Position numbers and translations under genes: made by a program. From positions 3,348,001-3,412,000 of the forward strand of contig OZ281496.1 of the NCBI GenBank assembly GCA_965637545.1: a stretch of DNA of 64,000 nucleotides, written 5' to 3'. Below, one piece after another: positions 505-42,942 of the stretch; position 1 is the first letter of the stretch, and each line of letters opens with the position of its first letter. A model generated the notes under the pieces. That model saw only the letters and a program-made list of their open reading frames with translations. It made no database searches and was not told the origin of the DNA. Source of the stretch: Phallusia mammillata. Its lineage: Eukaryota.

Positions 505-3500
505 TTAGTTCTCATGAGGCTGGTTTTGTTCTGTTTGCAACTGATTATCCGGGTTTCGACCATCATCGCCATCTATTTGTGATGGTTCTTCTGCTGGGGG
601 TGCACCAGGGTCGAAGTTGTCAAATGCAACTCGGGCTGAAATGATGATTGTTTGGTTACATAAAAAATAGTGTCCAACTACGACATCAATATTTTTCAAA
701 GTAAATCTACTCACATTGGTTTACAGGTGGCGGTGGTGGAATGTTTGGATTAAATTCTCTCATCTTAACTTTATCGAAAATCTATACAAAATAATTTTGA
801 GCTTAACTTGTTGTCAAAGATATTTAACAGTTTTGATTTTGTAAGTTTGTTCGTGCTGAATATTAACTTATTAACTCGAACTCAAAAACACATTTCAAAC
901 AAAGTTGATGCCATGAAGTTAAATTTCCTGTAATGCGTAATGCAGTCCTCATTTTTGACTAAAAATTATTTTGAAAAATACATTGTAATTTAATCATCAA
1001 CGCAAGTGCAAGGAACTGGTGTATATAGAATACATTGCGAAGACGTTTCAACAACCTCTCTTTTCATCTGACGAGCAGGGTTGGAACTTCTTGTTTGCAA
1101 GAATGTCCATCAATTTCGAAACATAGTCAGTACGATTCATTAAAACTACTTCGTTTACTGATGACAATACTCTTGTCCGCTTGCAGTAAGTGCAGGGCAT
1201 CCCGTTCTTCATCAGACAAAGCAGCTGCTTTCGCTCACGAAAGAAATAACCTATGTACCGACTGTACAGACTCATCAGCTTTTGTTTCAAGAGAAATCGA
1301 TTTGCATGATTGAGATGTAGATGCAGTTGGAGATAAATATATTCAAATTCTGCTCTAATTTGAAGTACCATGATTGTAGTTGGTACCCGCACTGATGATG
1401 ACAACAGAGATTGTTAAAACGTCTGCGTGATGTATTCTATATACACCAGTACCTTGGCACTTGGGTTTGTGATTAAATTACTTTTCAAGTCCGTATGTAG
1501 AGTTCCTAAGTATATTGTATTATTTTACTAAATACTACTTTTATTATTCTTACTTGGGGTGGCTGAACTGCTGCAGAGCCCCGTCTCTATGAAACAAAAT
1601 AACATCAATATTGAAAACGGAAGTTTATAGTTCACTTACGACGACTTTGCAATCCAACTCGAAAGTATTTTCGCAGTCACGCAGTCACGCAGTCACGCAG
1701 TCACGCAGTCACGCAGTCACGCAGTCACGCAGTCACGCAGTCACGCAGTCACGCAGTCACGCAGTCACGCAGTCACGCAGTCACGCAGTCACGCAGTCAC
1801 GCAGTCACGCAGTCACGCAGTCACGCAGTCACGCAGTCACGCAGTCACGCAGTCACGCAGTCACGCAGTCACGCAGTTACTTGGTATGGCTGAACAGGTG
1901 GACAAGGCAGATGCTGTGAAACAAAAGATCAACAAAATTGCAAAACAATTGGTATATAATAGTGACGTATGCCAATATGTTTTGTCAATAAATGCAATAC
2001 ATTAATTCGCTCGTTGATATATAGCATGTCGAAACGAGATGTTATATCTTAAAAAGGGGTATAGCATATGTAGCACACCTTTCATTAGAAACTGCTAGCC
2101 TGCAAGTATTACATAATATTTCAAAGACGGTCTGAAAAAATCGAACCTAAAGATATTATTTGCTGACACCAGTTCATTTCAGTAAATAAATGTTTATCTT
2201 ACTAATTATCTAACCTGTGTCGCTAAATGTTGTATATATTCTGATGAGATTTGATGCTCATTGCCATCCAATTGCCCTGGTTGGTCTGGGATTCCGTTGG
2301 GGTCAAAGTTGTCAAATGCTGTCACCGAAAATGATGTAGTATATTTAGATACAACAATATGCAATATCACAAAATCATGCAACTAATCGAAATCTCTGGC
2401 AAATTCACAATAAATGTCATGTCCGTATTTGTAGATGTTCACCACATTTAAGTATTATGTACCATCAGGTCGGTTTTGTTCTGGTTGCAGATGGTTGTTT
2501 GGGTTTTTATTCGTATTAACATCCATTTGAGCTGGTTCATTTGCTGGTGGTCCGAAAGGTGGGGGCGGTATGACTGATTCCTCTTTATATGCAAACTTAT
2601 AAACAAAACGTATTTCTTTTTTAACATTTTTTGCCCAATTAGCAACTATTTAGTTTGCTAGAACCCGTATTTGTTACGAATTGCAAATAAATTTATAGTT
2701 TAATGATGAAAATAACGGCCAAATAAACGTCAAATAGTGACATGCTTTTTTACAGCAATAAGTGTGTAACTCATGTGGCCTTCATATCGCTGATGATAGC
2801 ATGAGCATTTACCGAAACGTTTGAACACTTAAGCATGTTGTTTTTTACGTTTATTAAGACCGTTATTTTCACAATATAATAGGGTTGCCATATTTTATGA
2901 AATACAATCCCTGACAAAATTCTCAGTTGCGTGAACCCAGTTTTTCTCAAACTTTAAGTCTAAATGGGTTGACGTACGTCTGAGTGTGTATTTCAGAAAA
3001 ACGAAAGTTGATTGCAGGATTTTAGCTAGTTATACAAAATTGCGCATAACAAGGATCCAAATCTGACATCACAGACAGAACAAAAAACATTACAATTGTG
3101 CGCGAACAATTGCATTTTGTTAGTTGTCAATTGTCATGCAATAAAGCCTGTTGTTTAACAATGGGGACGGTCGATTCTCACTTGAACTTTGATTTCAACT
3201 TATCCAGTTGCACAAACTGACGCCAAATAAGGTTATAGAATTACTTCCACCTTTTCGAGGTCCCCGCAAAATGCCCTAAAGGACCGCGGACCCCAGTCTG
3301 AGAACCGCTGCGTTGATCATTTTTGCGATCCAAACACTTCTATTCCGGAATAAATTAGAATATTGGGAAGTCACACGGACAGCGACAAGAGAAAACGTTA
3401 CATACGATACTCTGATCCTTGTCAATTAACTTTCTGCTCGCGCTTCTGTTTAGTCAAGTTTTTTTTAACCAAAAAAATTAAACGATGGGAGTCACAAGAA

Positions 3501-4498
3501 GCATTTTAAATTTGAAGAAAAATGCCACTGTAAAAATGTTCCACTGCAAAAATTCCACTGTAAAAATGACTTTTAGTTGTTTGTTAGTTCCCTGCATATT
3601 AGGTACACAGTTAAAAATGAAATTTTCCACGTTCTCATGTAGCTTCGAATGCTGTGTTTTCTTGAAACGCGGATTTTTATTTGTGTATTTAACGCGTATT
3701 GTTAAACATCTAGTAACAAACAGGTATTGTTACGCGCGCACACACATTAAACAGTAACAGGTACATTAACCTACGCGCCGCCAGTTTACCTCTTATCGTT
3801 TCATGGTATGGACGCGGTTGTAGCTATCTACTAGAAACTTTATCCGTTGGTACATTAATTTTATAATATATACAAATATTTTTTCTTGAATTCCGGACTT
3901 TTAAGTACATTTTACCATTTCTCCCTGACACAGATTTAAACACTAAATTCCCGGACATGTCAGGGAAAATCCGGACGAATGGCAACCCTACAATATAACT
4001 TATGAACAGTTCTCTATATAGTGTTCTAAAATTCATAGTTATATTTTAAATTATGAAAGGATTATGAATGAAATAGTTCTTGCCTGTACATAATTACCTT
4101 GGACATGTATAGCAATGTATTACCACATCTGAAAGTTGTACCGTTGGGATATGCATTGCCTGGTGCCCGTGGTGCTGGCATTGCTTGTAAATATGACTGC
4201 GATGGCAATGGCGGTGGTGTTGGTATTGGTTGTGAATATAATGGAGGTGGTGATGGCTGTAGATGTAGTGGAGAAGTCAGATTCTGAAAAACATTGGATT
4301 TAAAACAATTCGATTCTAAGAACAAAAGCAAAACTGATACACATGACAGCGCTGACAAACTGTGATGTTTATATTAAACTACTTTAAAGATCCATAAACA
4401 CATGTTACCACTTAGCACGATAAACACATGTTTCATTTCGCATTAATCGTACTTACTTCATTTGTATGTGGTGAATGCTTCATTTCTTCATGTGACAT
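505..4498 (-). CDS. Small Pro/Gln-rich disordered protein, family member 1 (8 coding exons, 223 aa predicted)
   Basis: Exons 4457-4498, 4142-4283, 2463-2582, 2215-2318, 1881-1913, 1554-1586, 715-781, 505-635. All are GT-AG with consistent phases (0,1,1,0,0,0,1) and give one open frame: [32 protein letters not shown]...[43 protein letters not shown]. The last exons are conserved in paralogues at 5906-6180 and 42671-42942. Confidence 0.7.
988..1510 (-). mobile_element. Penelope-like retroelement fragment enclosed by imperfect inverted repeats
   Basis: Minus-strand frames give [19 protein letters not shown] and [22 protein letters not shown], resembling the region just upstream of the RT core in Penelope-like elements. 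About 80-bp inverted repeats at about 986-1068 and 1397-1481. Absent from the paralogous intron near 6380. Confidence 0.6.
1672..1876. repeat. Perfect octamer microsatellite (CGCAGTCA)x~25
   Basis: Directly visible; intronic, abutting the donor site of gene 1 exon 5. Confidence 0.99.
2880..3990. mobile_element. Non-autonomous hAT (Tip100-like) DNA transposon
   Basis: TIRs TAGGGTTGCCA...TGGCAACCCTA; 8-bp TSD CAATATAA at 2872-2879 and 3991-3998; lies in gene 1 intron 2. Confidence 0.9.
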
Positions 4499-5905
4499 TG
4501 TTGTATTCAAAGCTTTTTCGATGAATCAAATCAGACAAGAATGTTTAGATTTTAAACAATTTGCTAGAAACTCACTCATGTAAACTATAACACAATATAA
4601 TTGTTTTTTTGAATAAATTTTGCATAGAAAACGTTTAAGTTTTGTTTTAGAACGATTCAAGCAAATCGGTAGGAAAAGTTCTGTTCGTTGTGTAACAAAG
4701 TCCGCTGAAAAGTGAAAGAATGAATTTACTGCGCAATATGTATTGTTTCCCTAATACTTACGTTTACACAAAGTGACTTGTCAAGTCACTGATGATAAAA
4801 CAGTCAGATGTAGAATAAAAAAGTCTTCAATTCTCAGGTAACGTTTAAACACAATTGGAAATGGTTTGAAAGTTTTTTTTATCTTTGGCAAAAAAGTCAC
4901 ATGTTTAATTATATATATCGTCTTCTTTTATCCAACTTCGAACACATTCACCCACTGTGTACAAAGGGTGTCATATTTGAATTATATACTTGCTTTAGTA
5001 TTGCAAATGATTTGATTGTTATCTTCTAAACCTTGTTAAATATCTAAAACCCCTAGTTTATAGCACTTTGCAGATTGGTCCATATTGATCTTGTGTCTAA
5101 AAAATGTCCATGATGTCGTATTTAGTGTTATAAACAACTTAGACAAATCGAATTTTCGAAGTTTCAATGTCAGCAATTATGCTGTTTAAATCCTGTGCCC
5201 TTCAAGGACTGTCTGTATACATGTAATAGCTTTTAACATTAGGATAATAAAATATTCGTTTACATTTTCTATAACTGCTGTATATGTTAGTATATCTTGA
5301 ACTTCACAAAAGCACATTTATTTTCTGCCTGGTAACAGTAGAACTGATAATTTGCACAAATAGAAGTGCAGACAAGTGCTGTAGAAGATTTAACCTCGAG
5401 AAACATGCAGCCACACAAGAAACAAAATCAAAACATTGGCCACGTCATGTCACACTTTGACGCGCAACTTCCAGGATGTGACGTAAAACCTTCTCAAAAT
5501 GAAGTGAAAATATGGTATCGTACTTTCAACAGTCGCTCTTATCGGATAAGCTGTACATTTTTTAGCTTGATTACTTAAATTTTGCGATTTTTAATTCAGA
5601 CAATTCGTTTAAAAGCCACGCATCAAGATATTAATAGCTACTTGTTGGAAGAAACATATATTGATTGAATATTATATAGATACATGCCTTATAGTTCAAA
5701 AACATACAGTTCTACGTACAATGAGAGTTTAATCTTCACATCCCCTAACCACATTTATGACAGAAGCTTTTCCAAATCGTAATTAGTCCAATACAATAAA
5801 GTGTATTACAAATTCATCCATCTGCATTGGAAAGGACCAACAATATTCTAAACCTATGGCAAATAAACGCAAAAGCATAATTTTTAATGTACATTTAGGC
5901 AAACA

Positions 5906-6757
5906 TTAGTTGCTACGAGGCTGGTTTTGTTCTGGTTGCAACTGATTAACCGGGTTTTGACTTTCATCGCCATTCATTTGTGATGGTTCTTCTGCTGGGG
6001 TTCCATTAGGATCGAAGTTGTCAAATGCAACTCGGGCTGAAATGATTGTTTGGTGACATAAAAAAATAGTGTCCAACTACGACATCAACATTTTTCAAGG
6101 CACATCTACTTACATTGGTTCACAGGTGGCGGTGGTGGAATGTTTGGATTAAATTCTCTCATCTTAACTTTATCGAAAATCTGTACAAACTAATTTTGAG
6201 CTTAACTTGGTGTCAAAGATATTTAACAGTTTTGATTTAGTTTGTTTGTACCTGCTAAATATTAGGTTATTAAATGGGATTCAAAAACACATTTCAAACA
6301 AAGTTGGTGGCATTATAGTTAAATTTTCGGAAGTAATGCGGTCTCCATTTTTGACTAAAATTTATTTAGAAGAATATATTGTAGTAAATACTATTTTTAT
6401 TATTCTTACTTGGCGTGGCTGAACTGCTGGACAACCCACCATCTAGAAAACAAAAGGGCAACAAAATTGCAAANNNNNNNNNNNNNNNNNNNNNNNNNNN
6501 NNNNNNNNNNNNNNNNNNNNNNNNNNNNNNNNNNNNNNNNNNNNNNNNNNNNNNNNNNNNNNNNNNNNNNNNNNNNNNNNNNNNNNNNNNNNNNNNNNNN
6601 NNNNNNNNNNNNNNNNNNNNNNNNNNNNNNNNNNNNNNNNNNNNNNNNNNNNNNNNNAAACACCCATTCACGAACTCACCGGCTCACGAAATCCACCACG
6701 CACCACGTCCTCTTTTTGCTTATCATCGCACTTCTGCTTCGAAATGCATTTACCCAT
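5906..6757 (-). CDS. Small disordered protein, family member 2, with N-terminal acylation-like motif MGKCISK
   Basis: Exons 6680-6757 (MGKCISKQKCDDKQKEDVVRGGFREP, donor GTGAGT), 6410-6442 (MVGCPAVQPRQ), 6114-6180 and 5906-6036 ([20 protein letters not shown]...QPRSN*). Phases are consistent. An assembly gap lies in intron 1 and could hide exons. Confidence 0.65.
6474..6657. other. Assembly gap (184 N)
   Basis: Run of N. Confidence 1.
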
Positions 6758-7149
6758 TTTGTATAAAGGTCCTACTTTTTTACATTAACACTTTTATTAA
6801 AAGTTACTAATTTACTATTTTTACTTAAACTTTTTCACTGGAAAATTGTAAACATTGTTGTGCATTTTAAACCGTTTTTTTTTTGCAATCAGCACATCAG
6901 AATCTATTTTATAATCACAAAATGATAGCAATGAAACAGTTAAATTCCCAATCGCTGCATGCTTGTCTGTGTACATATAATAGCTTTTGACATCAGCTGT
7001 AAATATGTTGATTTAACATATATCGGATAAACAACTTGTTAGAAGAAACATATTTGTTGTAAAATCAAAACAGCCTTATAATAAGAGTATGACATAAAAG
7101 AATTATTATCATAATTTTGTTATATCCTAAAGGTAACTTTTTCGACATT

Positions 7150-7607
7150 ATAAAAAACTCATCACTCCGGTCTTCACAGTCGTCAACTCCGTTGCATTGT
7201 TTACTTTTTGGCAGACAGCTGTTATGTAAATTGCCATCACTGCAGTTGATTGTTTTGTAACAATCACATTCGAACTTACTAGCTGGACAAGAGCAGTTAA
7301 ATTCATCACTGCCATCCAAACAGTCCATCTCTTTATTGCATACGCGATTGTCTGGTATACAGCTACGTTTGCCTTTACAAGTAGTGTTGAAACAGTCACA
7401 CTGAAACCAGCCTTCTTGACAAACATGATTACATTCGTCGTACCAATCTTCACAGTCATTCGACCAGTTGTTTACCCTGGACATCTTTAATGCATCCTGG
7501 TTGTTTACACCGACCAAACTTGTGACATTCACATTCGAACATTGAAGAAGGACAGGTGCAGTTGGGACCGCGGTAAGGTTTCTCGCAGACCGAAAGATTT
7601 TCAGGTT
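7150..7607 (-). pseudogene. Inverted, truncated copy of the LDLa-receptor exon 2 (about 3 Cys-rich modules)
   Basis: Homologous to 11563-12010. The acceptor reads TACGG instead of CAG; a 1-nt insertion (TGCATTAAAG vs TGCATAAAG) shifts the frame; homology ends after the third module. Confidence 0.85.
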
Positions 7608-9004
7608 CCGTAATTCGAAAACAGCAAATAATACTAAACACAATTTTTGTGTTTAAAAAAATAAGCTTTATATTCACTTACTGAATTATCAAGCAATAAC
7701 TTTTTGTTTGTTGCAACCAAATTAAATAGAAATTTATTCACATTAGTTGTTGCGGTATATTTTATATATATAGGCATTGATTAAATTTAGCTTATTAATG
7801 CGCAATCAGTTTGCAGGCAGAATTTAATGAGAAGTCAATTGATTAATGCGTCTTTGGCGTTTAATTACGCTCACGTTTTTTGTAAGGGGCTTTCCCTCAA
7901 ACCATAGGCGTTAGCTACGCATACGGACTGCCAAGCTAATTATCAAACTCATTCAAGTGATCATAAAAAGTTTAATGTATCTCTTAATAATGCTGAATCA
8001 GGCTGATTTGTTTAAATGATGTTGATTATTTAAAACTAGAAAAAACTTTTATTGCTTTGTTTTGTGTATATAAGTTATGTTTATCATTTACTACGCAGTA
8101 CAAAAATATCAGATTAAAAAGAATCATTCCTATACACGAAAACTGAAATTTGGTGCATTTGCAAGTTAGTATCCAACTTTACGTTTGGATATACATCTAG
8201 ATTCATGAAGTATCATAGTTTGGTCTGTACTAAATTTGATAACTTTAACACTTAACGTAAATACGTTTTGAATTTTTACTACACTACCTACGTTGGCACT
8301 GCTAAGCCACAGTTTTATTTTGCCGTTTTTTTGCGTTTTTGAGCGGAAAACATTTTCCTTAATTTACCTAAAATATGATTTTTTGCCTGAAGCATTTTGA
8401 TTAAAATCTTTCCTGATTTAACTGAATAGAATCATAGTATAAATTTACCTTAATACAATACCAATCTGCCTGTCCGTAACCTATGTGATTTTGAATTAAA
8501 TATTCCACTAATCGCAGCTGTTTGAAACTCCTTCCAACGCAATATTTTTGCACGCCCATTTAACTTTCATGCCAGTTTCCGGTTCGTGACGAATTAGGGG
8601 TCATTGCGTCACAGCGTGTCAAGAGAATCAGTGCTGGATTAACCATTAGGCCAAGTAGGCACATGCCTACAGGCCAATCAAAAATCCAGGCCACTTTCTT
8701 GTGATAATGATTTGGCAACACCGATAATTCTATTTCTTAGTTGGCAACCCTGATTTTCAGGCCACTTATAAAATGTGCCTAAAAGCCAGCAGACCTTGAA
8801 GAGAATGGCTTCACAAAAAAAGCGCGGATCACTGAAAAACTCGCTCGCGATTTTATTTCATCATCGCTATGCTCACATTGTAACACAATATCAATGTAAA
8901 TTGCCTAGTTAAGACAGACTACAAGGCAAAGTAAGTTTAGCCAGAGGCGGTTGAGCAAAAAAATGTGAAGCGATGCTTTGGTTGATACCAACTAAGGCTT
9001 TTGT

Positions 9005-9290
9005 TTAAAGCACGACTTTGTATGCTTTAAAGTGCGTTTTAACAAGCTTCATGCAGTTAACAATGACGCTTGTTACATGCACGACTGTGCACTCATAAAT
9101 TGGGTTCCCTAACAATCTTCTTGCAGTCAACATATGCCTTTGTTTTATGCGCAACTTTGAACGCTTAAAAGCGCGTTTTAACGAGGCGTTTATGTTATGC
9201 ACGACTTTGCAAGTCTAAAGCGAATTTTCTAACGGGTTTAGTGCAGTCAATCTTCAGTCCTTTTATGTGCAACGTTAACTCGAACGGTTG
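9005..9290. repeat. Degenerate minisatellite with about 50-70 bp units
   Basis: Recurring ATGCACGACTTTG-like (9010, 9077, 9148, 9197) and TGCAGTCAA-like (9052, 9122, 9242) motifs. Confidence 0.5.
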
Positions 9291-23700: not shown

Positions 23701-23790
23701 GTGGCTGTAGTGATGGGAGCTGGTTACATTGTGTGGGGCAACATTGCCCGAGATCCAAAGGCGAAATTAAAAAAAATCGTCTGTAGATAA
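17732..23790 (+). CDS. CUB-CUB-ZP-TM protein A (CUZD1-like architecture, 591 aa predicted)
   Basis: 13 GT-AG exons: 17732-17792, 18298-18458, 19104-19254, 19416-19591, 19734-19887, 20167-20209, 20622-20787, 21015-21172, 21469-21640, 22103-22173, 22278-22467, 23195-23303, 23627-23790. Signal peptide; CUB motifs LKSPNFPSNY..CVW and FISDGS..GF; ZP-C motif YIHCDVTVC; EHP-like LSAGPVHI; TM helix; open frame throughout. Confidence 0.9.
22538..23095. mobile_element. hAT-type MITE
   Basis: TIRs CATGGGCGTC...GACGCCTATG; 8-bp TSD CTCAAATA (22530-22537, 23096-23103). Confidence 0.85.
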
Positions 23791-25049
23791 ATTATCATGT
23801 ATGTTCAGCAATGTAGTTTGTATAGTTTTCGACAACAGTTGGTTTTTCATCAATTGAAGAAAAATCTTTGCAGCATTTATATAGACATCACTTTGAAAGT
23901 TGATGTTTGAAAATTCAATTGAGAAAATCGTTTGACAAGTTTCTGTAGTTCGTACTTTTGATTAATTGCTTTGTGTTTTCAGAAAATTACGTTGTCGAAA
24001 CAGTACATTGTGCCTGTAATTCTTATGCAATATAGTCAAGCTTAGTTCACATTGTGTCTTTATTATGTTTCGATTACTTGGAGTATTGGAGAAGGTTAAA
24101 TTGGATTTTAATTTGAACATCATTATCTTTTAACAAAAAGCCTTGTGTTAATGTTGTAAAACTCTCTCCCATTGTGATCCCAAACTTAAAAGCAAAATGC
24201 CCAAACCCGACCCACTACGCAGTACGGTATTCAGGTAAAATAAAGTCCTAGTTAGAGTTTTGTGCAGTGGCGGCTCGTGCCTAAAATATGTGGGGGTGCT
24301 GCTCAAAATTTTAGCCATTATTGAACATATATAACTTGGCAATATATAGAAAACCTACGTTTATAGTTTTCTAGCTATTGTTTTGTGCAGAAAAACAAGT
24401 AATACAAATCTTAATTAGAAACTCCATTGTGACTTTGTTACGCAATAATGTACACGAGTGTAAATAGCAGACGATATCATTTGTGTGTTTTGTTTACTTG
24501 CACAGCGACTGCTAAACTGTTTAGCCAAAACACCATAACATGCAGTAATAATGTGGAACAAAAACACACGTGACACAGACTCGAAACTAAGCGGTTGTAA
24601 ATATGGTAAAACACAACAAGAATATAGTAAAAAAGTAATGTTTCGAAAAAGGTCAAAGTATTTCAGTTCGACAACATTTAAAAAAATGGTCATGTTTCAT
24701 TTAAGTAACCTTATGGTCACAGTCAGCGTTTTCAACATATTATATAACACTTCACAGATTATAATTGTCACACAAAAATCTAGCCATACAGCTGTTTATT
24801 GGTATCATAACTGACAAATTTAACAACCACTTTACATTTGTGTCAGAACTTGTTTATTTTGACATATTTTTTTGAATTTTTGCGTACAGACTGTTATTTG
24901 TCTTTCAGATTTTTAACTGCTATAATTGCTGCTTTATTTGCTGGCAAATAGCTTATAATTGCTTTTTTAAGTGCAAAACTCTATCAAGCTTTAAAATTTA
25001 CAACACTCTCACTGAAATTTAAACCATATTATTAAACATGGTGCTTCCT

Positions 25050-31600: not shown

Positions 31601-34600
31601 ATTTTGATAAAAATCTGACGGTACTACAATTTTTCTGACTAAGTACTGCAATTGTTGATTGTTTGAGGGCCGCATGCGGCCCGCGGGCCGCACGTTTGAC
31701 ACCCCTGTCTTAGAGCATATTATAAACTAATTTAGAGGTTCCAGGAGAGGGAATCCCGACATGAGAAAATTTTGCTTGTAAAATGAGGGTAGTGTAAAGA
31801 AACTATTTTTTTCTCTCTTTTTTAAAAATGGTAATGTTGTCGACGCAAATAATCGAGTGGAAACGGTTTGTTATTTTTAGGAGATTTCCTGCCGTACGCA
31901 CTGAAATTCATATATGTATAAGTTTTTTTTTTTTAAATGATTTTTGAGTAACATATTTATTATAAACTGCTTTTCCAGTTTGCTTCTAATATTGAGAAAA
32001 GCAATCAATATGCTTAAGGTGGCAGAAATCTTATTTTTGTCAAGCGCCTAATTTTATGATGAGAAACTTGCTGGCTTAAGGAGGTATGCGGCCTTTTAGG
32101 ACATCAAGTGTGGCCTTCGGGAATAAATGTTAACATTTGTATTGTTTTTAGTTCAAGAACGAAGCAGGTAAAGTGGACAAATTTTCGGGGGAGCTTGAGT
32201 CATTTGATTACACGGTGACAGCAACTAATCTCACTGTCTTGTTTTTGAGCGACTCTAGTGGACCGAGTACTGGATTTAGTGCGACAGTAGGTGAGACAAC
32301 TCTCCTTCTAGTTACAAACTGTCAACATGCAAATGATTAAAATACACTTGAACTCAGCCAGCATGCGTTATAGGTTGAGGGTGATCTGAAAATAAATTTT
32401 CAATATATATTTTAAAAACTTGAATTAACAAATTTAATTTGATGTGCAGAAGTAAATTTTAATCCACAAAACGCAGAATAGTGCTCGAACTTCTATATTT
32501 CGTTCACAAATTGTTTTTTTATATATATACAGTAGAAACACAATCATCAGTTGAATGTAGGACTGAAAACTTGATCATCAGGTAGGTTACTATTTTCTTT
32601 TTAATTATTTTGTGAAATTTATTGATAATTGTTGAAAGTAATATTCAGAAGATTGTTGAAAAAAATTGTAGTACTTCAAGCATTTTGTTGTGCTGCCTGT
32701 TTTGTCATAAGCCTGCAATTGCTTGTTTTTTATTGATTGAGACATCTTTTACTTATCAGCAATGGGTCTTCTAATGCAGTGGTCTTCAACCATTTTTATA
32801 GGCGACCCCAATTTAAGGGAAAATGAAATCAGAATTTGCATGCGACCCCATTTTTATCAACACCGAGAAAAATGTTTTAAGTAATGCTGAACCGAAAGAA
32901 CAAGTAGGCTACACTAACTGTACATAATTACAAACAAATTTGGCGATACAAAAGTATTCCGAAAAAGTGGCTATACAAAAGTGTTATAAAAAATTTTTTA
33001 AGGCGTTTCATTTAATACATAAACCCAATTTTCGGAACACAAACTTGCCAAATTGTTCAACATTTAGTTTGCACTGTTAGTGAGATGGTTGCGCCTGTAT
33101 ACTGCCCACAAGTTTTTGAAGCCGCGGCTTGACTTTGCACAAGCTTAACAGCATGTCATGCATTCCAATCAATTACGATGTTTCGTTTCTAATACACTCG
33201 TTGCACTAAATCCTGCTTAACACAGCAACGTGGTTGAAAACGGGATTAGAAAAATTTGACATAGTTGGGTACGTTACATAAATAACTATTCACTGGTTCT
33301 GGTGTCACCTTAAATAATACAAACTTGAAGTGTCATAATACACGTTGTCCAAACCCATTGTTACGCGATAAAGGCATTTCGTGTTTTTTCACTACCACGA
33401 TTTAATTGCAACATGAGGTAGCAAGCTGTACCACAATTCAAGAGCAAAAGTTGCGATCTAAAGGAACATAATATTAGTTTTATTTTCTGTGATCAATTTT
33501 GAAATGCAATAAATCAAGCGACTTATTGCGACCCCAGAAAAGTTTAGGCGACCCCACTTGCGGTCGCGACCCATAGGTTGACGACCACTGTTCTAATGGG
33601 ATGCCGCTATAAAAACTGCAACATAGTATAGATGTTTGGAAAATGAAAAAAATAACTGGTTGTCTAGACGGGTGACACTAAAACGCTGAATGGGCGGGAC
33701 GGGCGGGATGGGCGGGACGAGTGGGCAACCGCTAAATATCGGGTAAATTGCTGACGGTTAGAGCTATTAGGGTTGGGTTGAGGTTTTATAATAGTATATG
33801 AATCAAAAAAATGTCCCTGCCTAAAACTTATTCAGCAATTTCCTGACATTCGGCAAAAATGCTATGGCGGGAGATTGCTTGACGTCTCAGGCGCAGGATG
33901 TTTAACTCGGTTGCGGAATGTATCCGGCGGAATTATTTTTAACGATTTTCTATTACAAAACCTTATCCCAACCTTAATAGCTCTAACCGTCAGCAATTTA
34001 ACCCGATATTCAGCAGTTTTCACGACGTCCCGCCCGTCCCGCCCATTCAGCGTTTTAGTGTCACCCGTCTAGACTTATAAAATGTACATAAAGTTAACAA
34101 TCTAATATTCGCAGAGTACCAGCTTATCAACAAAACAGATTAGATTACGAACTCGACGACACTCTTTACATCGCATTGGACAGGGAAACCTCCCTTTCTC
34201 AACTCAATGACAGCTGCAAGGTCACGGGGTCAAACCCAGTGTTTACGTTTGACATTGGCCAATGCAAAGGTGTTTTTAAGGTAAAATTGGATTTTGTTCT
34301 GAACTCATAGACTATATGTCCTTATTATTTTTTAAGACAACATTATCTGTTAGGGGTAATAATAAAGTGTAATAAGCTTTTATTGCTGCATAATAAAAAG
34401 CTGACAATTTTGAAATATGTAATTTTCGTGCTCTGATACAGAATGCAAACGGTACGGTGTCGGTGTCTTTCCTGATCTGGAGATACCTAGCTTCATCCCC
34501 TGCAGTGATCCAGCGTGACGTTCAAAACAAGCTCAATGTGACTTGTTTATTTGACGCGGACCTTCTTATCTCGTCATCCAAAATTAGTACACAAATCGGG

Positions 34601-37443
34601 TAAGGAAAAGAAAAACAAACCATTATATAACAGCTATGGAGTGGCATTCGGCACAAGACAACATGTACAAGACACACAGTAGGCGTCATAAAACGTAACA
34701 CGTGGTCTTTTGTTGACCACACTTGGAAATAAATTGACAAAAGTAAAACAGGATGTTGCACATGACAAAAACATCTAACCACTCCACGAATGGCATACGG
34801 CTTTGAACACATTACACACGACACAGAACACATAAATCTACCCTTGGCACAATACACCTGGCCCCCACGACATGAAATACGGTAAAACTATATCACATCT
34901 GCAACATGTCACAAAGCATGCACCCAACAGCACCTGCCACACTATGTATGACACGGATCACAGTTTGTCTGTCCTTCCTTTTTTCGGTAATTTCGGTTGT
35001 TATGTGCACTTTGCCATATTAGGTGGCAAAATCGTTACGGGGTGGCTTAGTACTTCTCAGATAATGCCAAAATGTTGTGGAGAGTGTGTTTGTATTGCTT
35101 TTTTTGTAGATACAATTTCTGATACAATCAAAGCACAACATGATGATACAAAAAAGGACAGAATTGATTCTGTACGTTTCTAAAGACATAGTTATAATGA
35201 AGTTTGTTATTTTGCTTTTAAACACCCCGCGAGCACCTAAGGGAGTTAAAAACAGTGAGCTGTTTGTTAAACTTTTATATGTTTTAGATTTGACGAAATT
35301 TTTGCAAAGAAAGCAGGAACGTTGGATGTCGCCCTAAATCTATTTAGCAACGAATACTTCAACGAGAGCTTGCCCAGAGAAGTAACTGTACCCAACTACA
35401 TTTTTGCTAAACTTAAACTTGATGAGATCTCTGCAGCCGATGATTACTTTATTGTCCAGGTGAATTGAAAATAAACTGCTTTTAGTGCAGGAAAACATTG
35501 CATTCTTTGATTTAATATACATTATTCTGGCATCTTTGGTCTAGTTTCCAATTTATACTTTAAAGTGGAATACCTTTTTGCACAGCTGGAAGGCTGTTGG
35601 GCGACACGCAATGAAAACTCCGATAGTTTGCCGAGTTACCAAATTGTACAAAGCGGGTAAGATATACTTGAATTACCTCAACACATGTTTTTCTTAGTAG
35701 CGAGTTTATTTGTTTAGTATTTAATTTTGTATCTGTATTTCACTATGATTAACCCAGCATCGAAACTATTAGATGCGTTGCGCCACCCAGTGGAGGAGAG
35801 GCTGCCGACGCGAAGACGTTGATACGAAATTACGAATCCAACTTTGCAACGTTCAAGCTGATGAGCTTTGTGTGGACAAACTTTACCGACGCAGAACAAT
35901 TTATCTACATCCACTGCGACGTGACCGTCTGTCATAATTCAACTGGACAATGCCCTGGACAGGTGACTTGATTAGAGTAGATTTTGGACTTGCAACAGAG
36001 AATAAAGTTTAGCAAAATAGTGTTGGTCGAAAAAAAAGGTCAAGGAAAATGATATGTTTTTTTTTAGATCAAAATTCCTGGGTATTGCTCTAAAACAATC
36101 GAGACAGTATGTCTCTAAATAAATAAGAATTTCTTTGGCGTTTATGTCCAGTTGTAGCATTAAAAATATTAGGGTGGAATGGCTTTATATTCTGTTGCTT
36201 CCATACCAAAGTTTTCTAGGTTCGCTTGCCAATACGGTATATTTCCTGTCACCAGCTGATTTTATGTGGCTAGTTAGCAAAAAGGCTGAATGGTCCGGCG
36301 CGCCTGAATCATAACATAACCTTGATAGGAATTCGACCCCCATCCACCTATATTTTATTTTAATCCGAACCACAATAAAAATACGAGGTTTACTGTGTGT
36401 AGCTTACATACAAATTGAAAAGTAATTTTAACCCTCTAATTTGGTTTTGTGCGAGCAACGGTAAATATTCCGCCACAGGCTACGCTGTCCTATGTTGAAA
36501 TCGCTAGGGAGACTGGCCCTTAATCGGCCTGGAGAACTATGATGTAAATATATGTGTGCCGTGATGGGCTTAATTCTGTATGACGCCTTCAATAAAACTG
36601 ATGTACAATGAAATATCAATATTTGTATAATTCTTTTTGCAGTCTTGTTCTGGTAAGAAACGGCGATCTGTTGAAAACAATGGTCGCAATCAACGGCTTT
36701 CTGCAGGACCAGTGCACATCATTCAAGGTACCGCTTTCCTACTTGGTAAGACAATGATAAAAATTTAATTTCTATTCTAGATAATATTGCTGATACACGT
36801 GCTTTTGCTAAACAAATTTGTAGTTCTAGCAAGCAAGTCGCACCTCTTGGGGCATAATAACACAGGTTTTCGAAATATTTTCTCGGTTTAATATACTGTG
36901 TCTTGGTGATTGATTAGTTTGATGTATATGTGATTAACTTGACTGGTAACATTACCAACCGCAGCTTTTATTCGATTTCCATAAGTTGTTTTAAAAATAA
37001 GACTGTAACTAGCATTAAAGGACACATATAAAAGGCAAATAAAATAAATAATTGTCACAAAATATATTTCATGAGTTCGAATCCCATCACTTGTTTTCTT
37101 TTTCTTGTATCCGTTGCTTTAACAACCAAACTGATTCGGTGGCCTTTTTGCAATCTCAAAGTGTACCGTGATTGTAGCCAACACATGAGTATAGCCAACA
37201 CATGTCCGTTTCGTGACTGGCTAATCAATCAGTACAGTTCTTCCCATATTTTTTTGCTATATTTGTTAATCATGACTTTTTGTCTCTTATACAACAGGAG
37301 AAAGAAATGAAGCTATGGAAGGAGCCGGCAACAGCTACCAACTTGTGATGTTTGTTCTGCTGGCTGTGATTGTTATTGGAGCTGGTTACATCGTATGGGG
37401 CAAACTGACCCGGGATCGCAATGCGAGACAAAATCGCCAGTAG
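28688..37443 (+). CDS. CUB-CUB-ZP-TM protein B (585 aa predicted)
   Basis: 13 exons: 28688-28757, 29898-30064, 30212-30362, 30686-30861, 32152-32290, 32533-32581, 34115-34280, 34442-34599, 35288-35459, 35586-35656, 35773-35962, 36643-36745, 37298-37443. Same phases as A; basic site KKRR before LSAGPVHI; TM helix. Confidence 0.9.
29002..29235. mobile_element. Short hAT-type MITE (degenerate)
   Basis: Ends CAGTAGTCGGGAACC...GGTTGCCGACACCTG; flanks CATCAAAA / CTCCAAAA are only an imperfect TSD. Confidence 0.55.
30877..31707. mobile_element. hAT (Charlie-like) non-autonomous element
   Basis: TIRs CAGGGGTGTCA...TGACACCCCTG; TSD TCTTAGAG (30869-30876, 31708-31715). Confidence 0.92.
32777..33590. 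mobile_element. hAT (Charlie-like) non-autonomous element
   Basis: TIRs CAGTGGTCTTCAACC...GGTTGACGACCACTG; TSD TTCTAATG (32769-32776, 33591-33598). Confidence 0.92.
33662..34074. mobile_element. Foldback-type MITE with long TIRs
   Basis: GTCTAGACGGGTGACACTAAAACGCTGAATGGGCGGGACGGGCGGGA mirrored at 34027-34074; inverted similarity continues for roughly 140 bp. Confidence 0.85.
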
Positions 37444-38458
37444 ATGAACTTTTTATTATTCTTAACATGGCATTGTTTGTATGCATGTAAAAACTGTTCT
37501 TTCTAAAGATAAAAACAAATAACAAATTAAAGCTGTTTTCCATAAAGCTGTTTGTTAATTTAGTTATCAAATAAATATTATGCATCATTTCACTTATTAC
37601 ATGCATCATTCATAGCTGACATGAAATTACTTTGTCAAAGTATTGTTGTGTTTCTGTTTAACTGTTATATACTGTACAATATAATCAGATGGGGTCAAAA
37701 CTGTGTCCTTTGAATTAGCTGATATCATGAGTCAGAAAAAAACATTGTTAAATATTTTAGCGTGGTAGCCTGTGTTGAGCGAGGTTATATTGGATTTTCG
37801 CACAAACCAGGTTATACTGATCTCTGTATTTTTCGTGTTTTTCGCAAAATGTTTTTCGTTTTGAAACACTATCTGTTTATGAGTATCTTTTGACATGTGG
37901 TAGAAAACCACTGGTGGGGCATAATCTAGTGGCTTATTTGTTTATGCATTCATGCCAGTATCTAAGTCTCATTGTTTTTAGTTCCATGAACGTCAATCGC
38001 TGCAATCGCATAACCCACGCAACAATCGTGACGTAACAAAGAGATAGCAAACAGTAAACAGGAAAGAAGGCGTTGATAACTGATCTTAACCGTTGTCTTT
38101 GTACTGCCAAATGATTAGCAAAGAGAAGTTTATTGGTTGGGTGAAGTTTTTATACCTGGCTACAAACTTGCTTGGTTGGCGGTGAAAAGTTATTTGTAGC
38201 AGCGTAAACAGTTAATCCTTGCACATTTTCATTGAATCAAAATCATACAGCTCGTGTCATCGGTCATGCCAAGTTTTAAACGGTTTGTTTTGTGACGAGC
38301 GTCTGTTTCGTTTCAGTGCTATATATTTTGCAATTTGTACCTTGCTTTAGTGAAAAAAAGTATCATTGGCTGCTTTGCATTAACTATGGGTTCATGTTTT
38401 TCGAGAAACGTGCTAGAAAACAAGAAAACATCAGGAAAAACAAACGAGTTTTGCCACA

Positions 38459-41400
38459 ATGGTAAGTCTTTCATTGATCAGTGAGATTTTTCCGTCGTCC
38501 CAAAAATTAGCTCAGTAATTCCAGTTGTAACGCAGTTACCAGTTATTTATAGCATAGTTTTTTGCAAGAATTCCTATGTGAGATCTATGAAAATTAGAGA
38601 TTTTAAATGATGTGAGATTTTTTTATGTCCCGTTTGCTGGACGAAATTAGCAATATTTTTTACCAGCTTACATGAACCGTTGTCAGTAGATACGATTATT
38701 CTCTTTTGCGTAGATACGGTTAGACGTCCACTCTGGTGTTTCAAATTAGATTTAAAAACGCGCCTGCCAGATCTCAACTATAGGCTTCTTCCCACTAACA
38801 CTCCACACAAGGTTCCAACAGTTTACTTGTAACAAATCCCTTGCTGGCTTCAATTAGCAAGATGCAGTTTCTTCAACGGAAACCAGATGGATAAACTGGC
38901 GGACGGTTTTCAAAGGAAATATCAGGCCATAAACACAATAGAAAAATGCCGATCTAAACAATATAACCGTAGCTTTTGGACGAGGACTTTAAAACAGTTA
39001 CTTGTTGACGAGCTACGTCATACTGCAGGTAACAAAGTACACTTCAAATCAGGCATATTGTCACAACAAAAGGTTTAACAATACAAGACGATGGTTATTG
39101 GCGTAATATTGACAAAGATACAAAAGCAAACAAAACAACTTGGTCATGAATTGCTGGCAGACTTCAGACGGTAGACAAAGAATTAATTTGTAACTTAACA
39201 AATATATTACTATCATGTTTATGTGTTTTTCCTGCAAATTCCTTGAACATAAAACGTTTTTTTTAATGTTAAAATGTTTTTTTCTTTTTGACATATAAGC
39301 TAAAGACCTGTTTTTGTTTAATTTAGTTGAGAAAAAAGCGATAAGAATAAGTTTGAAGAAGGAAACAGGGCATCCCCCACCACTTACTATAATCCCTACA
39401 CCAGAAATTGGTGATGACGTGAGTAGAGTGGATAGAAGGTTTATGGTTTAGATCCTTACATACTAGAACTAGTTTGCAAATGACAACAAGGCGTAGGAGA
39501 CCGGCTTAACTTGGTATAACGCCTTATTGGGCCCGGAGTATTATGGTTTGTACATGAGTGTGCCGTGATCGCTGGTCTGCATGACCGCTACAGAATTCCA
39601 GTATGAATATATGTTTAACTAAGCTATGTTGTTTTTATTGCTAACTTTTAAATCTTAGGAATGGTCCTCTGCATCAACACTGAACGAGTTTTATATGCGG
39701 GTGAGAACATAAACTTCATTTGCTAACATTCGGAAATACCTGTATTATATTCGGAAATAACATTTGGAAATAACGATTATATTGTCGGGTGTGTTACCTG
39801 TCGTTACCTGTGACAGTCGCTTTTACATCTCAAAAGCAGCAATTTCGTAATTGGACGGAGTTTCATTTAGTATTACTACATTTACCAACAAGTAAATTAC
39901 GCTTTTTAGCGTGAGTAAAATGGATAACAAATAAGGTGTAAAATCGAACATAATTTATATGATCCAAATATAATTAACCAACGAAATACGAAACTGCGCG
40001 TTTTTATAATATCTCTGTAAAACTTATTTTGTGGTAAACCACTAAATCAATCCAGAAAACCTAATATTGATAAAAGATTCGACAAAAATAGTTAGCTGAA
40101 ATTGCGTGTTTTTTGTATTTTAAATGTATCATATTCAACCAAACTGACTTGAAAAATATAGCTTTTAAATACTATGTAAACTCCCAGAGATAAAACGTTG
40201 TAATGAATGTCCTAACACCGTGATGTGTTGTTTTCAGGAGACGGAGTCGGCACGTAGGAGGGTAAGTAAAAATTATTTGTGGTTTTAAAACATGCAACAC
40301 TGTTGATAGATAATGTCAATTTCAAAGACACATTTTACAAAAAAAAGTATGCTTGGGGTTGATAACTACCGGTAAATGTTTGTTGTGTATTTGGTTACCA
40401 GTTATATATTTGCTGGCTGTTACAAACCAACAAAAGACAAAAAGTTGTAATAATTTCGTGAACTCCATGTTTTGTTCCTTTCAGGAGATAGAGTTGGACT
40501 CGAGAGAGAAAGTGAGTAAAAATTTACGTTGTGCGGTAAAAACGCAAGTCTGTTGAGAGATAATTTCAAGTCCAAAGACAATATTGCCTTTCTTTTTATC
40601 CGCAGTACTTGCAACATCCCCAACTATTAACCACGCTAATGTCATGAAATAAAAGCAACGGCGTGCAGTCTCGAGAAAAAATACTACATCATCATCATTT
40701 TATTTTCAGTTGCGTACGCGGTTGTTGCATGCAAATAAAATATAATAGGCAAGCAACTGGTGGATGGCGAAGGGACCATATAGGTCATCAAGTCAGCCAC
40801 CCGTGTACAGAAATAATAATAAATAGGCAAAAAGGCTCTAATACAGCGCTTCCCAACATTTATGGTGCGTGTCCCCTTCATAACTTTATCCCCTTCATTT
40901 TCCAAGTTGTGCCGACCCGAAGAATAAAATTAGTTTGCTATTTTACAGTTACATTTAAATATCCGAAAATTTAATCCGCACTATACTTTTTTTCCCTAAT
41001 CCTTGTTTTTCGATTCATTAATGGTAGTCTAAACTGTTACAAATTACATTTTAGTTTAGTTGACTTTAGTTGAATTTCTGATAAAATTCGTATTGTAAAT
41101 AACGCAACAAATAACGTAATATTTCCTTATTTATGCTGTCCATTATTAATGCTTCGGATAATTTTATATAAATGCTGGCAATATTCTTTACCGCCAATAT
41201 GCTTTACCGCCAATATGCTTCGGTAAAAATGAAAAAGAATCCATAAAACGTCTTAAAGTTGATATTTTTGGTGTAAACTCAATTCATGCTTAGATCTCTG
41301 TGAGAAAAAAGTTAATTTGTATTATTTTTACATATCTATCACACCGATTTCGCAGAAAAAAAAACTAAATATTAAATTTGTGAAATCTATAATCAGTCAT

Positions 41401-42942
41401 ACCAAAAACATAAGTCGAACCAAAGCGGCCTGATGTAAAATTTATTTTTGACTATGAATATGACATAATCAACAACAACGTTTGGCGTTACATGATCCGA
41501 TACAGAATAAAGTCATCTAAGAATCAATGAACAAAAACCAAGAACAGAGTTCATAATGTAAAGAACAAGTTTGTTTCGAGATAAAGCAAGCACAGCAAAA
41601 TGTGTCCTGTGTTAGAGGGAAATGCCCGGAAAGATTCCTGACGTGGGTTCAAATCCCACAACAGGCTAGATTTGTTTGTCTTTGCCTTGTCGGATGGGAA
41701 TGCTTGGGAGACCGACTTAACTCGATATAATGCCTCATTGTGCCTGGCGTACTATGATTTGTATGTGAGATTTTTCGTGATCGAAGGTTTGCATGAACGC
41801 TTCAGAATCCAGTAGGAATGTATGTTTATCTTAGCTAATTTGCTTTGATTGTTAAGTTTTGATTCTCAATAGCTCTCCCCAGCACCAACCCTAAACATAA
41901 ACACTTTGCAACTTAGCTCAAAATGCAAAGTAATTATGTGTTGATAGCCAAAACGTTCTAAACGTATCTATGTAGAAGAACGTCACTGAAACTTATAAAG
42001 AAACCATCCAAGTAAGAAGCAAAAGAAAAACATTCAGGGTTTATATCTCCTCCCGACCTTTGTAATAAAAGCCCAAAGATTGCGTTTTGTATTGTTCAGG
42101 AGGACGTTTATGAGTTCGAATTTGACATGCCGGTAAGTAAAAAAATTACTTCTAAAGCAGTAAGTATGCCTGACCACTTTTTGACCATCATGATTTTGCC
42201 AGTTCGAATTTTCAACCTTTTATCTGCAAATTTTTTTTAAAAGTTTAATTAAAAACCAATATGGAAACTATCAATCTAAATCTAAAATCTAAATCGTGTT
42301 TGTTACGACAAAAAACACACGATGGCGTTCAGACCCCTGGAGGAACAATGTCTGAGAGTGCAACCAGTTTTTTTGATATTCGTAATTTTTTATTCTTTTC
42401 TTTTTAGCTTCCGCGTTTCAGGCGATCATCGTCCAGCTCGTCTGAAGAGGTACAGTCACCAAGTAGTACAACCCTTGGCTACAAACATAATTCTATTTTA
42501 GTGAAACGATTTTTAGGTGTAATTTATTCCGTATTGCTGAAACAAGTGTTCCATATTTCAAGTCATGTTGGTCTTCAGTTAATGCACAAACTGTTGGAGT
42601 TATTCAAAAGTTGTTTAGAAATGCAAACTTAAGACACATTGAAAATTTCAGATCAAATTTTCTTGTCTAGATATATGTAGAAAATATCGTGGAACCTCCA
42701 CACAACGTAAACCGACCACTTCCAAACCAAGGTAGGAAATATAACTCGACGAATGCCCGCATATCTACTTTTTGTTCAACTTTTGTTTGCCAATAAGTAG
42801 ATATTTTTTTGGCCTATTTGCATTTGACATTTTTGATCCTGCTGCACCCCCAGCAGAAGAACCAGCTCAAACAGATGGCGATGATGGTCGAAACCCGTAC
42901 GATCAGTTGAAACCAGAACAAAACCAACCTCATAACAATTAA
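38459..42942 (+). CDS. Micro-exon gene, family member 3 (terminal exon 1 nt out of frame as assembled)
   Basis: CCACAATG|GTAAGT at 38459-38461; phase-0 exons 40238-40261, 40485-40511, 42100-42132 and 42408-42449 (candidates 39362-39418, 39659-39700); 42671-42731; terminal exon about 42801-42942 encoding [40 protein letters not shown], clearly paralogous to genes 1 and 2. Confidence 0.55.
39494..39660 (+). mobile_element. SINE body fragment
   Basis: Similar to 41700-41870, to about 36505-36600 and to the reverse complement of 63870-63960. Confidence 0.6.
41620..41870 (+). mobile_element. tRNA-derived SINE
   Basis: B-box-like GGTTCAAATCCC followed by a body (GGGAATGCTTGGGAGACC) shared with 63870-64000 (-). 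Confidence 0.7.

What the first reader, a model, noticed from the sequence alone, without database searches (positions are those of the whole stretch)
505..42942. Unrecognised short-exon gene family with a shared C-terminal module and interchangeable N-termini
Seen: genes at 505-4498, 5906-6757 and 38459-42942 all end in a phase 0-1 exon finishing in NQ plus a phase-1 terminal exon AFD(N/I)FDPxxxPAEEPxQxxGDxxxNPxxQLxxEQNQP. Their N-termini are unrelated: Pro-rich with PPLY, acylation-like MGKCISK, and acidic/basic micro-exons. I recognise no domain. Inference: a lineage-specific modular adaptor family in which exon shuffling retargets a common tail to different compartments or partners.
Basis: partly seen in the sequence, partly recalled or inferred. 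Interest (0 to 1): 0.75.

Follow-up and report, generated by a model that had tools for sequence, protein, structure and literature searches.

The report
Orphan sea-squirt genes sharing one tail
A sea-squirt genome holds a small local cluster of apparently species-group-specific genes that share their last two exons, coding for a floppy acidic tail; the repeat is real, but no transcript or relative was found, and most of it is explained by local duplication rather than exon shuffling.

Summary
The repeated terminal exon is real. Three full 131-nt copies end at 505 (-), 5906 (-) and 42942 (+). Two partial copies lie at 2463-2573 and 2215-2318 (-). Each full copy follows a homologous 61-67-nt exon ending in NQ. 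No relative exists: Pfam gave nothing, the word search gave nothing, and a profile search of 1.84 billion proteins gave 0 hits, although ascidian proteomes are in the protein collection.

- Gene 2 is a 90% identical tandem duplicate of the 3' part of gene 1.
Genes 2 and 3 therefore share a myristoylation/palmitoylation-like start.
- Gene 3's last intron ends in TG, not AG.
- Between the tandem copies the tail exon diverged faster than its flanks (dN/dS about 3). Against the old copy, dN/dS is 0.3-0.4.

Four RNA-like runs covered only an intronic transposon and no exon.

Best reading (0.5): a young, taxon-restricted family of small, lipid-anchored, disordered proteins that grew by local duplication, with some copies decaying. 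Spliced models were not searched joined. The gap at 6474-6657 lies in a presumed intron and was left unread.

The parts
505..635 (-). Terminal exon c1 of gene 1 (131 nt, phase 1, cag acceptor, TAA at 505-507). It encodes [10 protein letters not shown]...EQNQPHEN.
715..781 (-). Penultimate exon of gene 1 (67 nt, phase 0 to 1, ends ...PPPPPVNQ, donor GTGAGT).
1554..1586 (-). 33-nt symmetric micro-exon of gene 1 (ends VQPPQ). It is homologous to 6410-6442.
1881..1913 (-). Second copy of the 33-nt micro-exon (ends VQPYQ), just upstream of the 8-nt microsatellite.
2215..2318 (-). Partial module copy c5. It has a cag acceptor and encodes (A)[22 protein letters not shown]..., then diverges. It is either spliced at CAG|GTTAGA or ends at the TAA at 2209-2211.
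2463..2573 (-). Partial module copy c4 ([15 protein letters not shown]...EQNRPD). It lacks AFDNFDP, is 49% identical to c1 and is phase-compatible with c5.
4142..4283 (-). Pro-rich exon with PPLY (a PPxY-type motif), the proposed exon 2 of gene 1.
4457..4498 (-). Proposed first coding exon of gene 1 ([14 protein letters not shown], donor GTAAGT).
5906..6036 (-). Terminal exon c2 of gene 2 (131 nt). This is the fast-diverging copy: 11 copy-specific changes, 10 of them nonsynonymous.
6114..6180 (-). Penultimate exon of gene 2. The protein is identical to gene 1's, with one synonymous change.
6410..6442 (-). 33-nt micro-exon of gene 2.
6474..6657 (.). Assembly gap inside the presumed first intron of gene 2. 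It was not read or filled.
6680..6757 (-). First coding exon of gene 2 (MGKCISK..., 26 codons, A at -3 and G at +4, donor GTGAGT, phase 0).
38386..38461 (+). Probable first coding exon of gene 3 (MGSCFSRN..., 25 codons plus 1 nt, A at -3 and G at +4, donor GTAAGT).
39327..39418 (+). Candidate exon 2 of gene 3 (92 nt). It converts phase 1 to phase 0 and has donor GTGAGT. It is a model only.
40238..40261 (+). 24-nt micro-exon candidate (ETESARRR), a paralogue of the 27-nt one.
40485..40511 (+). 27-nt micro-exon candidate (EIELDSREK).
42408..42449 (+). 42-nt micro-exon candidate (basic residues, a Ser run, then acidic residues).
42671..42731 (+). Penultimate exon of gene 3 (61 nt, phase 0 to 1, ends ...PLPNQ, donor GTAGGA).
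42812..42942 (+). Terminal exon c3 of gene 3 (131 nt if spliced at the homologous place). It is preceded by TG instead of AG.

Best explanation
This is a young family of small protein-coding genes restricted to an ascidian lineage. The nearest annotated relative of the host is Phallusia.

The ancestral gene plan is a first exon MG-x-C-x-S-K/R, which is a consensus for N-myristoylation with a nearby palmitoylatable Cys. It is followed by a few short, fast-changing exons. The gene ends with two conserved exons: a 61-67-nt exon ending in a Pro-rich stretch plus NQ, and a 131-nt exon. These last two encode an acidic tail rich in Pro, Gln and Asn that is intrinsically disordered. The tail has conserved islands: AFDxFDP, PPAEEPxQ, NPxxQL and EQNQP.

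Inferred mechanism: the protein is pinned by lipids to the cytosolic face of a membrane and offers the tail islands as short docking motifs for an unknown partner.

The family grew by local duplication. There was one old duplication (gene 3 versus genes 1 and 2). There was a recent tandem duplication of the last three exons plus the 3' flank (gene 1 versus gene 2). There were also internal duplications of the module (c4, c5). Not all copies are healthy: c3 has TG at its last acceptor, and c2 is piling up amino-acid changes.

Shown: the copies, their boundaries, the phases, the duplication structure, the absence of relatives and the predicted disorder. Inferred: transcription, splicing, lipidation and docking function.
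For: Copies and boundaries:
- There are three full and two partial copies, and only one frame is open in all three full copies.
- The similarity between c1 and c3 is confined to 131 nt. That is the length of the terminal exon; the similar stretch ends 6 nt past the stop codon. The flanks are unalignable.
- The penultimate exons are homologous, with an in-frame 6-nt indel.

Gene models:
- Canonical GT-AG, phase-consistent chains exist for gene 1 (8 exons) and gene 2 (4 exons).
- A chain from MGSCFSR to the tail exists for gene 3.
- MG.C.[ST] is expected 0.39 times per window from shuffles. It was observed twice, both times on the right strand upstream of a module, with A at -3 and G at +4 and a strong donor in frame.

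Selection:
- The penultimate exon shows 1 synonymous change in 67 nt between the tandem copies, against 6.5% divergence in the 3' flank (P = 0.07 at a 6.5% neutral rate, 0.009 at 10%).
- dN/dS between c1 and c3 is 0.32-0.44.

Tail properties:
- Net charge is -6 to -9, P+Q+N+D+E make up 60-65%, and the tail lies far below the charge-hydropathy boundary.
- AlphaFold2 gave pTM 0.16, mean pLDDT 61 and no secondary structure.

Absence of relatives:
- No relative appeared in Pfam, the word search, the 1.84-billion-protein profile search or metagenomes.
- The positive control found Phallusia at 71% identity and Ciona at about 42%.
Against: - No transcript evidence. Four RNA-like contig runs from three studies covered only 2651-4036, an interspersed repeat, and none of the proposed exons in 1881-6473. 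No listed RNA run held more than 3% of the stretch's words.
- No predicted protein of any database carries the module, not even one derived from a transcriptome.
- Between the tandem copies the tail exon is more diverged (13%) than the intron and 3' flank (6.5%; Fisher P = 0.02), with dN/dS about 3. That means neutral or faster evolution, not purifying selection.
- c3 lacks a canonical acceptor in the right phase.
- The dN/dS values rest on only 40 codons.
- The tail matches no known docking-motif definition.
- Gene 1's Pro-rich head does not fit the common plan.
Confidence: 0.5

Rival explanations
1. This is a decaying cluster. The module belongs to one gene, past or present, and most of what is seen are unexpressed partial duplicates and pseudogenes. 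Their open frames persist only because the duplications are recent.
For: - No exon was covered in the RNA-like runs.
- c3 has TG instead of AG at its acceptor.
- c2 carries 11 copy-specific changes, 10 of them nonsynonymous, and its tail exon diverges faster than its flanks.
- c4 and c5 are truncated versions.
- The 3' part of gene 1 (1913-505) has no first exon of its own.
- A MITE-like insertion and a microsatellite sit in gene 1's introns.
Against: - c1 and c3 keep 86% identity over exactly the exon while everything around them is unalignable. This points to long-term constraint or to conversion limited to the exon.
- All splice sites and frames of genes 1 and 2 are intact.
- The penultimate exon is nearly unchanged.
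- Two independent MGxCxS starts are kept.
Confidence: 0.3
2. A common two-exon tail has been moved by exon shuffling onto unrelated genes, retargeting it to different compartments or partners.
For: - Gene 1 (Pro-rich head with PPLY) and gene 2 (MGKCISK head) carry near-identical last three exons, so one tail does sit behind two different heads if gene 1 is a single unit.
- The similarity between c1 and c3 is exon-limited.
- No polyadenylation hexamer lies between c5 and the next exon, which weakly favours one long gene 1.
Against: - Genes 2 and 3 share the same kind of head.
- The gene 1 / gene 2 relation is a contiguous tandem segmental duplication that includes introns and 500 nt of 3' flank, not a transfer of exons alone.
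- Gene 1 may be an upstream gene ending at c5's own stop codon plus a headless duplicate.
- There is no transcript to show which head is joined to which tail.
Confidence: 0.15
3. The 131-nt block is not coding. It is a fragment of a dispersed repeat or a conserved non-coding or RNA element.
For: - There is no protein relative anywhere.
- The window is rich in transposons.
Against: - No contig at 90% identity or more from four runs lands on c2, c4 or c5, whereas the true repeat at 2651-4036 attracts 21-92 contigs per run.
- Rfam gave no match.
- The block's edges coincide with an acceptor and a stop codon, and one frame is open in all copies.
- An upstream exon with matching phase is also conserved.
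Confidence: 0.05

Closest known systems
SH4-type dual-acylation N-termini (Src-family kinases such as Yes/Lyn MGCIKSK; Leishmania HASPB MGSSCTK; from my own knowledge)
   Same: It has Met-Gly, a Cys within the first five residues, Ser at position 6 and Lys/Arg at position 7. This is the arrangement that directs N-myristoylation followed by palmitoylation and membrane anchoring.
   Different: Only a 7-residue motif is shared and there is no sequence homology. No kinase or other domain follows. Lipidation is untested here. Gene 2 has Lys at position 3, which the PROSITE pattern excludes, although myristoylated visinin-like proteins (MGKQNSK) have it.
Disordered motif-array tails of endocytic accessory proteins (Eps15, epsin, amphiphysin: DPF/DPW, FxDxF, NPF motifs; from my own knowledge)
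   Same: The tail is acidic, Pro-rich and structure-less, with conserved Phe/Asp/Pro and Asn-Pro islands separated by variable linkers.
   Different: AFDNFDP fits neither F.D.F nor DP[FW]. The NP islands are NPD, NPV or NPY, not NPF. No partner is known.
Taxonomically restricted (orphan) gene families expanded by tandem duplication
   Same: There are no relatives outside the lineage. The products are short and disordered, the genes are locally clustered, some copies are broken and evolution is fast.
   Different: This is a description rather than a family. Here expression is not shown at all.
TG dinucleotides used as 3' splice sites (Szafranski et al. 2007, PMC2374985)
   Same: The last intron of gene 3 ends in TG at the place where its paralogues have AG. 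An AG lies 11 nt upstream.
   Different: In that paper TG sites are rare alternative sites in 36 human genes (abstract). A TG site that must be used to keep the frame is unproven here. It may equally be an inactivating mutation or an assembly error.

Membership tests
N-myristoylated / palmitoylated (SH4-like) proteins | Initiator Met followed by Gly2, small or uncharged residues, and Ser/Thr at position 6 (NMT consensus) | tested here: met
   Gene 2 starts MGKCISK (6757-6680) and gene 3 starts MGSCFSR (38386-38461). Gene 1's proposed start, MSHEEM, does not fit.
N-myristoylated / palmitoylated (SH4-like) proteins | Cys near Gly2 available for palmitoylation | tested here: met
   Both have Cys4.
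N-myristoylated / palmitoylated (SH4-like) proteins | Actual lipid attachment and membrane association | not testable with these tools
   This needs labelling with a myristate or palmitate analogue and a G2A / C4S mutant.
AP-2 / EH-domain binding motif arrays | Matches to F.D.F, DP[FW] or NPF | tested here: not met
   Reading the three tails shows FDNFDP or FDIFDP, DPG/DPN/DPA, and NPD/NPV/NPY. None fits these patterns.
WW-domain ligands (PPxY) | A PP.Y motif in an accessible region | tested here: met
   PPLY lies in the Pro-rich exon 4142-4283 of gene 1 only. Binding is untested.
Any Pfam family | Score above the gathering threshold | tested here: not met
   There were 0 families at E up to 10 for the three tails, the MGKCISK exon and the Pro-rich ORF.
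Expressed protein-coding gene | Spliced transcript joining the proposed exons | tested here: not met
   For 1881-6473, four RNA-like contig runs covered only the intronic repeat. This is inconclusive as proof of silence, because the runs are small and hold contigs only.
Expressed protein-coding gene | Purifying selection on the coding sequence | tested here: inconclusive
   c1 versus c3 gives dN/dS 0.32-0.44 and c1 versus c2 gives about 3. The penultimate exon is 97% identical against 93.5% in the flank. Only 40 and 22 codons are available.

The most novel reading that the evidence does not exclude
This is a previously unseen, ascidian-restricted family of dually lipidated, membrane-pinned disordered proteins. 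Its two-exon tail would be a new docking motif (AFDxFDP / NPxxQL / EQNQP). Linker residues would be under diversifying selection between tandem copies (dN/dS above 1), and a partial tandem duplication would have put the tail behind a new Pro-rich PPxY head, which would be exon shuffling caught early.
Probability: 0.12. Interest if true: 0.5.

Novelty: new member of a known kind. Interest (0 to 1): 0.25.

Why it matters
If the genes are expressed, they would be a compact example of how a lineage-specific protein family is born and diversifies. The elements are a lipid-anchor head, a variable middle made of micro-exons and a conserved disordered tail, copied by tandem duplication, with one copy perhaps fused to a different head. 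That would give ascidian cell biologists a new candidate membrane-docking motif to test. If they are not expressed, the locus is an ordinary patch of duplicated and decaying sequence. The main practical result is a corrected annotation: the MGSCFSR start of gene 3, the TG acceptor of c3, two extra module copies, and gene 2 as a tandem duplicate.

Tried and rejected
1. RNA support. The stretch beside it, 1881-6473, showed coverage only on 2651-4036, at 90-99% identity, on both strands and with many loose ends. That is a transposon, not exons. The cap then prevented laying 505-1671 or gene 3.
2. Word search with the 71-residue open stretch around c1, scoring residues 32-71: no candidate.
3. Profile of four module copies against 1.84 billion proteins: 0 hits.
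4. Metagenome scan: one locus (L001, 69% G+C) matching 13 Pro/Ala/Glu residues of a bacterial membrane protein. This is a chance match.
5. Synteny attempt. Contigs L002-L005 carry distant relatives of the neighbouring receptor gene, but they hold no module, NQ exon or MGxCxS exon.
6. Search for a relic of the MGKCISK exon in gene 1, or for any similarity between the middle exons of gene 3 and genes 1/2: none.
7. Rfam and tRNA scans of the window: nothing.
8. Full-text search for the motif strings: only irrelevant hits.
9. Earlier notes of this scan, searched by sequence and by words: nothing on this module.
10. Antisense coding: rejected, because stops occur in at least one copy in every other frame.

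Full report
**1. What is there**

The copies are c1 at 508-627 (-), c2 at 5909-6028 (-) and c3 at 42820-42939 (+). A self-comparison of the window gives 86% identity for c1/c3 and 82% for c2/c3 over 131 nt, with E-values of 3e-38 and 5e-30. Only the AFD frame is open in all three copies. Every other sense or antisense frame has a stop in at least one copy.

- c4 (2463-2573, -) keeps the second half of the module and is 49% identical to c1. It lacks AFDNFDP.
- c5 (2215-2318, -) keeps AFDNFDPNG... and then diverges.

**2. Exon boundaries**

In c1 and c2 a cag acceptor lies 8 nt before AFD. The terminal exon is therefore 131 nt long, in phase 1, and reads S-RV-AFD....

Each copy is preceded, 69-80 nt upstream, by an exon-like block with a pyrimidine-rich acceptor and a GT donor. 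The block starts in phase 0 and ends ...NQ plus one base. These blocks are 715-781 and 6114-6180 (67 nt each) and 42671-42731 (61 nt). The gene-3 block aligns with the other two. It shares about half of the columns, has an in-frame 6-nt gap and matches 12 of the last 16 bases before the donor.

In c3, however, the position homologous to the cAG of c1/c2 reads tTG (42810-42811). Splicing there would give an exon of exactly 131 nt in the correct frame. The only AGs within the open stretch (42796-42797 and 42799-42800) lead into the +1 frame, which ends after 37 codons and is not conserved in c1/c2. TG 3' splice sites are documented only as rare alternative sites (PMC2374985). A run of seven T lies just upstream. 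I could not check reads there. The c3 acceptor is therefore either mutated, non-canonical or mis-assembled.

**3. Duplication structure**

Region 1-987 matches 5402-6383 at 90% identity, and 1521-1617 matches 6377-6473 at 80%. Gene 2 is thus a tandem segmental duplicate of the last three exons, their introns and about 500 nt of 3' flank of gene 1. Homology runs into the assembly gap at 6474.

Gene 1 has two features within this unit that gene 2 lacks over the part that can be read. One is a roughly 500-bp insertion bounded by 85-nt inverted repeats (985-1068 and 1397-1481). The other is a second copy of the 33-nt exon beyond an 8-nt microsatellite.

By contrast, c3 shares only the two exons with c1/c2 and nothing else is alignable.

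**4. The gap**

The gap at 6474-6657 lies between gene 2's first coding exon (6680-6757, donor GTGAGT, phase 0) and its next exon (6410-6442, phase 0). No reading frame is carried through the gap, and the phases on both sides agree. Whether the two sides are truly adjacent, or whether an exon is hidden in the gap, cannot be told. I did not try to fill it.

**5. N-termini**

That ATG is in fact the end of a 25-codon ORF in another frame. The ORF is MGSCFSRN... at 38386-38461, with A at -3 and G at +4, and it runs into the same GTAAGT donor. This is the first AUG with a good context, and it reproduces the MG-x-C-x-S-K/R start of gene 2.

The pattern MG.C.[ST] is expected 0.39 times in the whole window on both strands (200 shuffles). 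It occurs twice, both times upstream of a module and on its strand. A phase-consistent chain with canonical sites leads from this exon to the penultimate exon. This chain is a model, not an observation.

Gene 1 is different. An 8-exon canonical chain runs from MSHEEM... through the PPLY exon, c4, c5, the two 33-nt exons and the NQ exon to c1. But c5 also has its own stop codon 6 nt past the proposed weak donor (GTTAGA). No relic of an MGxCxS exon exists in gene 1. Gene 1 may therefore be one gene with 2.5 copies of the module, or an upstream gene ending at c5 followed by a headless duplicate. The absence of AATAAA or ATTAAA between c5 and the next exon weakly favours the single-gene version.

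**6. Is it coding and constrained?**

For:
- The exon-limited conservation between c1 and c3.
- The conserved phases and the in-frame indel.
- dN/dS of 0.32-0.44 for c1/c3.
- A penultimate exon with a single synonymous change between the tandem copies, where 4-7 changes would be expected (P = 0.07 to 0.009).

Against:
- Between c1 and c2 the terminal coding part is 86.9% identical, while the intron is 93.7% and the 3' flank 93.5% identical (Fisher P = 0.02).
- dN/dS for that pair is about 3.
- With c3 as outgroup, c2 carries 11 private changes, 10 of them nonsynonymous, against 4 in c1 (P = 0.12).

The changes avoid the islands AFDxFDP, PAEEP, NP, QL and EQNQP. This fits short motifs in a variable linker. 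It also fits relaxed constraint in c2, or conversion between c1 and c3. c2 shares NG with c5 and M with c4 at positions where c1 resembles c3. Forty codons cannot settle this.

**7. Expression**

The run search listed no RNA holder. The best RNA-like runs held 2-3% of the words of 505-6473. I laid four of them, from three studies, on 1881-6473. All contigs fell in 2651-4036, mostly at 90-99% identity, on both strands and with many loose ends. That region is an interspersed repeat in the long intron. No contig touched c2, c4, c5, the PPLY exon or the MSHEEM exon. These are small contig sets, so silence is not proven, but there is no positive evidence.

**8. Relatives**

- Pfam: none for five pieces.
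- Word search: none.
- HMMER profile of the four copies against 1.84 billion representative proteins: 0 hits at E up to 0.001.
- Metagenome scan: one high-GC bacterial chance match.

As a control, the receptor ORF at 13653-14807 finds a Phallusia mammillata protein at 71% identity and Ciona proteins at about 42%. The genome is therefore an ascidian near Phallusia, and the protein collection holds ascidian proteomes. The blank for the module is then informative. Either the family is confined to a narrow lineage or it has never been annotated. Contigs carrying distant relatives of the receptor hold no module.

**9. Properties of the tail**

- Net charge is -6 to -9.
- P+Q+N+D+E make up 60-65% of residues.
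- Mean hydropathy is 0.30-0.33, against a disorder boundary of 0.47-0.49.
- AlphaFold2 on the alignment gave pTM 0.16, mean pLDDT 61 and no secondary structure apart from one four-residue helical turn.

The tail is disordered. It does not match F.D.F, DP[FW] or NPF.

**10. Verdict**

The most likely reading (0.5) is a young, taxon-restricted family of small lipid-anchored disordered proteins that grew by local duplication, with some members decaying.

Interest is modest. Orphan tandem families with disordered products are common, and nothing here is yet tied to a function.

All searches were made exon by exon and by reference.

Noticed in passing
window 11628-15272 (+); also 7065-7643 (-): A receptor gene with many LDL-receptor class A repeats followed by a rhodopsin-type 7TM domain. 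It has three long open stretches and few introns. Its best database relative is a Phallusia mammillata protein at 71% identity. An inverted partial copy of the LDLa part (79% identity) lies at 7159-7608.
   Followed up: partly
window 19094-23813 (+), 30205-37448 (+), 44224-48712 (-): Three diverged copies (72-86% identity in the exons) of a multi-exon gene for a CUB plus ZP-C domain membrane protein. Copies two and three flank gene 3 in inverted orientation.
   Followed up: partly
window 2651-4036: An interspersed repeat in the long intron of gene 1. It attracts 21-92 contigs per RNA-like run, mostly at 90-99% identity and on both strands, so it is a transcribed multi-copy element.
   Followed up: partly
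window 985-1481: A roughly 500-bp insertion bounded by 85-nt inverted repeats (86% identical). It is present in gene 1's intron and absent from the duplicate in gene 2. It looks like a MITE or a small DNA transposon that arrived after the duplication.
   Followed up: no
window 1672-1880: A near-perfect microsatellite of the 8-nt unit GTGACTGC (about 26 copies) between the two copies of the 33-nt micro-exon. It blocked the first read-laying run.
   Followed up: no
window 54382-57982 (+): A Ty3/gypsy-type retrotransposon remnant. It has gag-like and zinc-knuckle ORFs and an RT RNase H domain (56102-56941). Direct repeats 54382-54656 and 57726-57982 (87% identical) may be its LTRs. G+C here rises to 43%.
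   Followed up: partly
window 40238-40261 and 40485-40511 (+): Two micro-exon candidates (24 and 27 nt, ETESARRR and EIELDSREK) with similar flanking intron sequence. This looks like a tandem duplication of a micro-exon inside gene 3.
   Followed up: no
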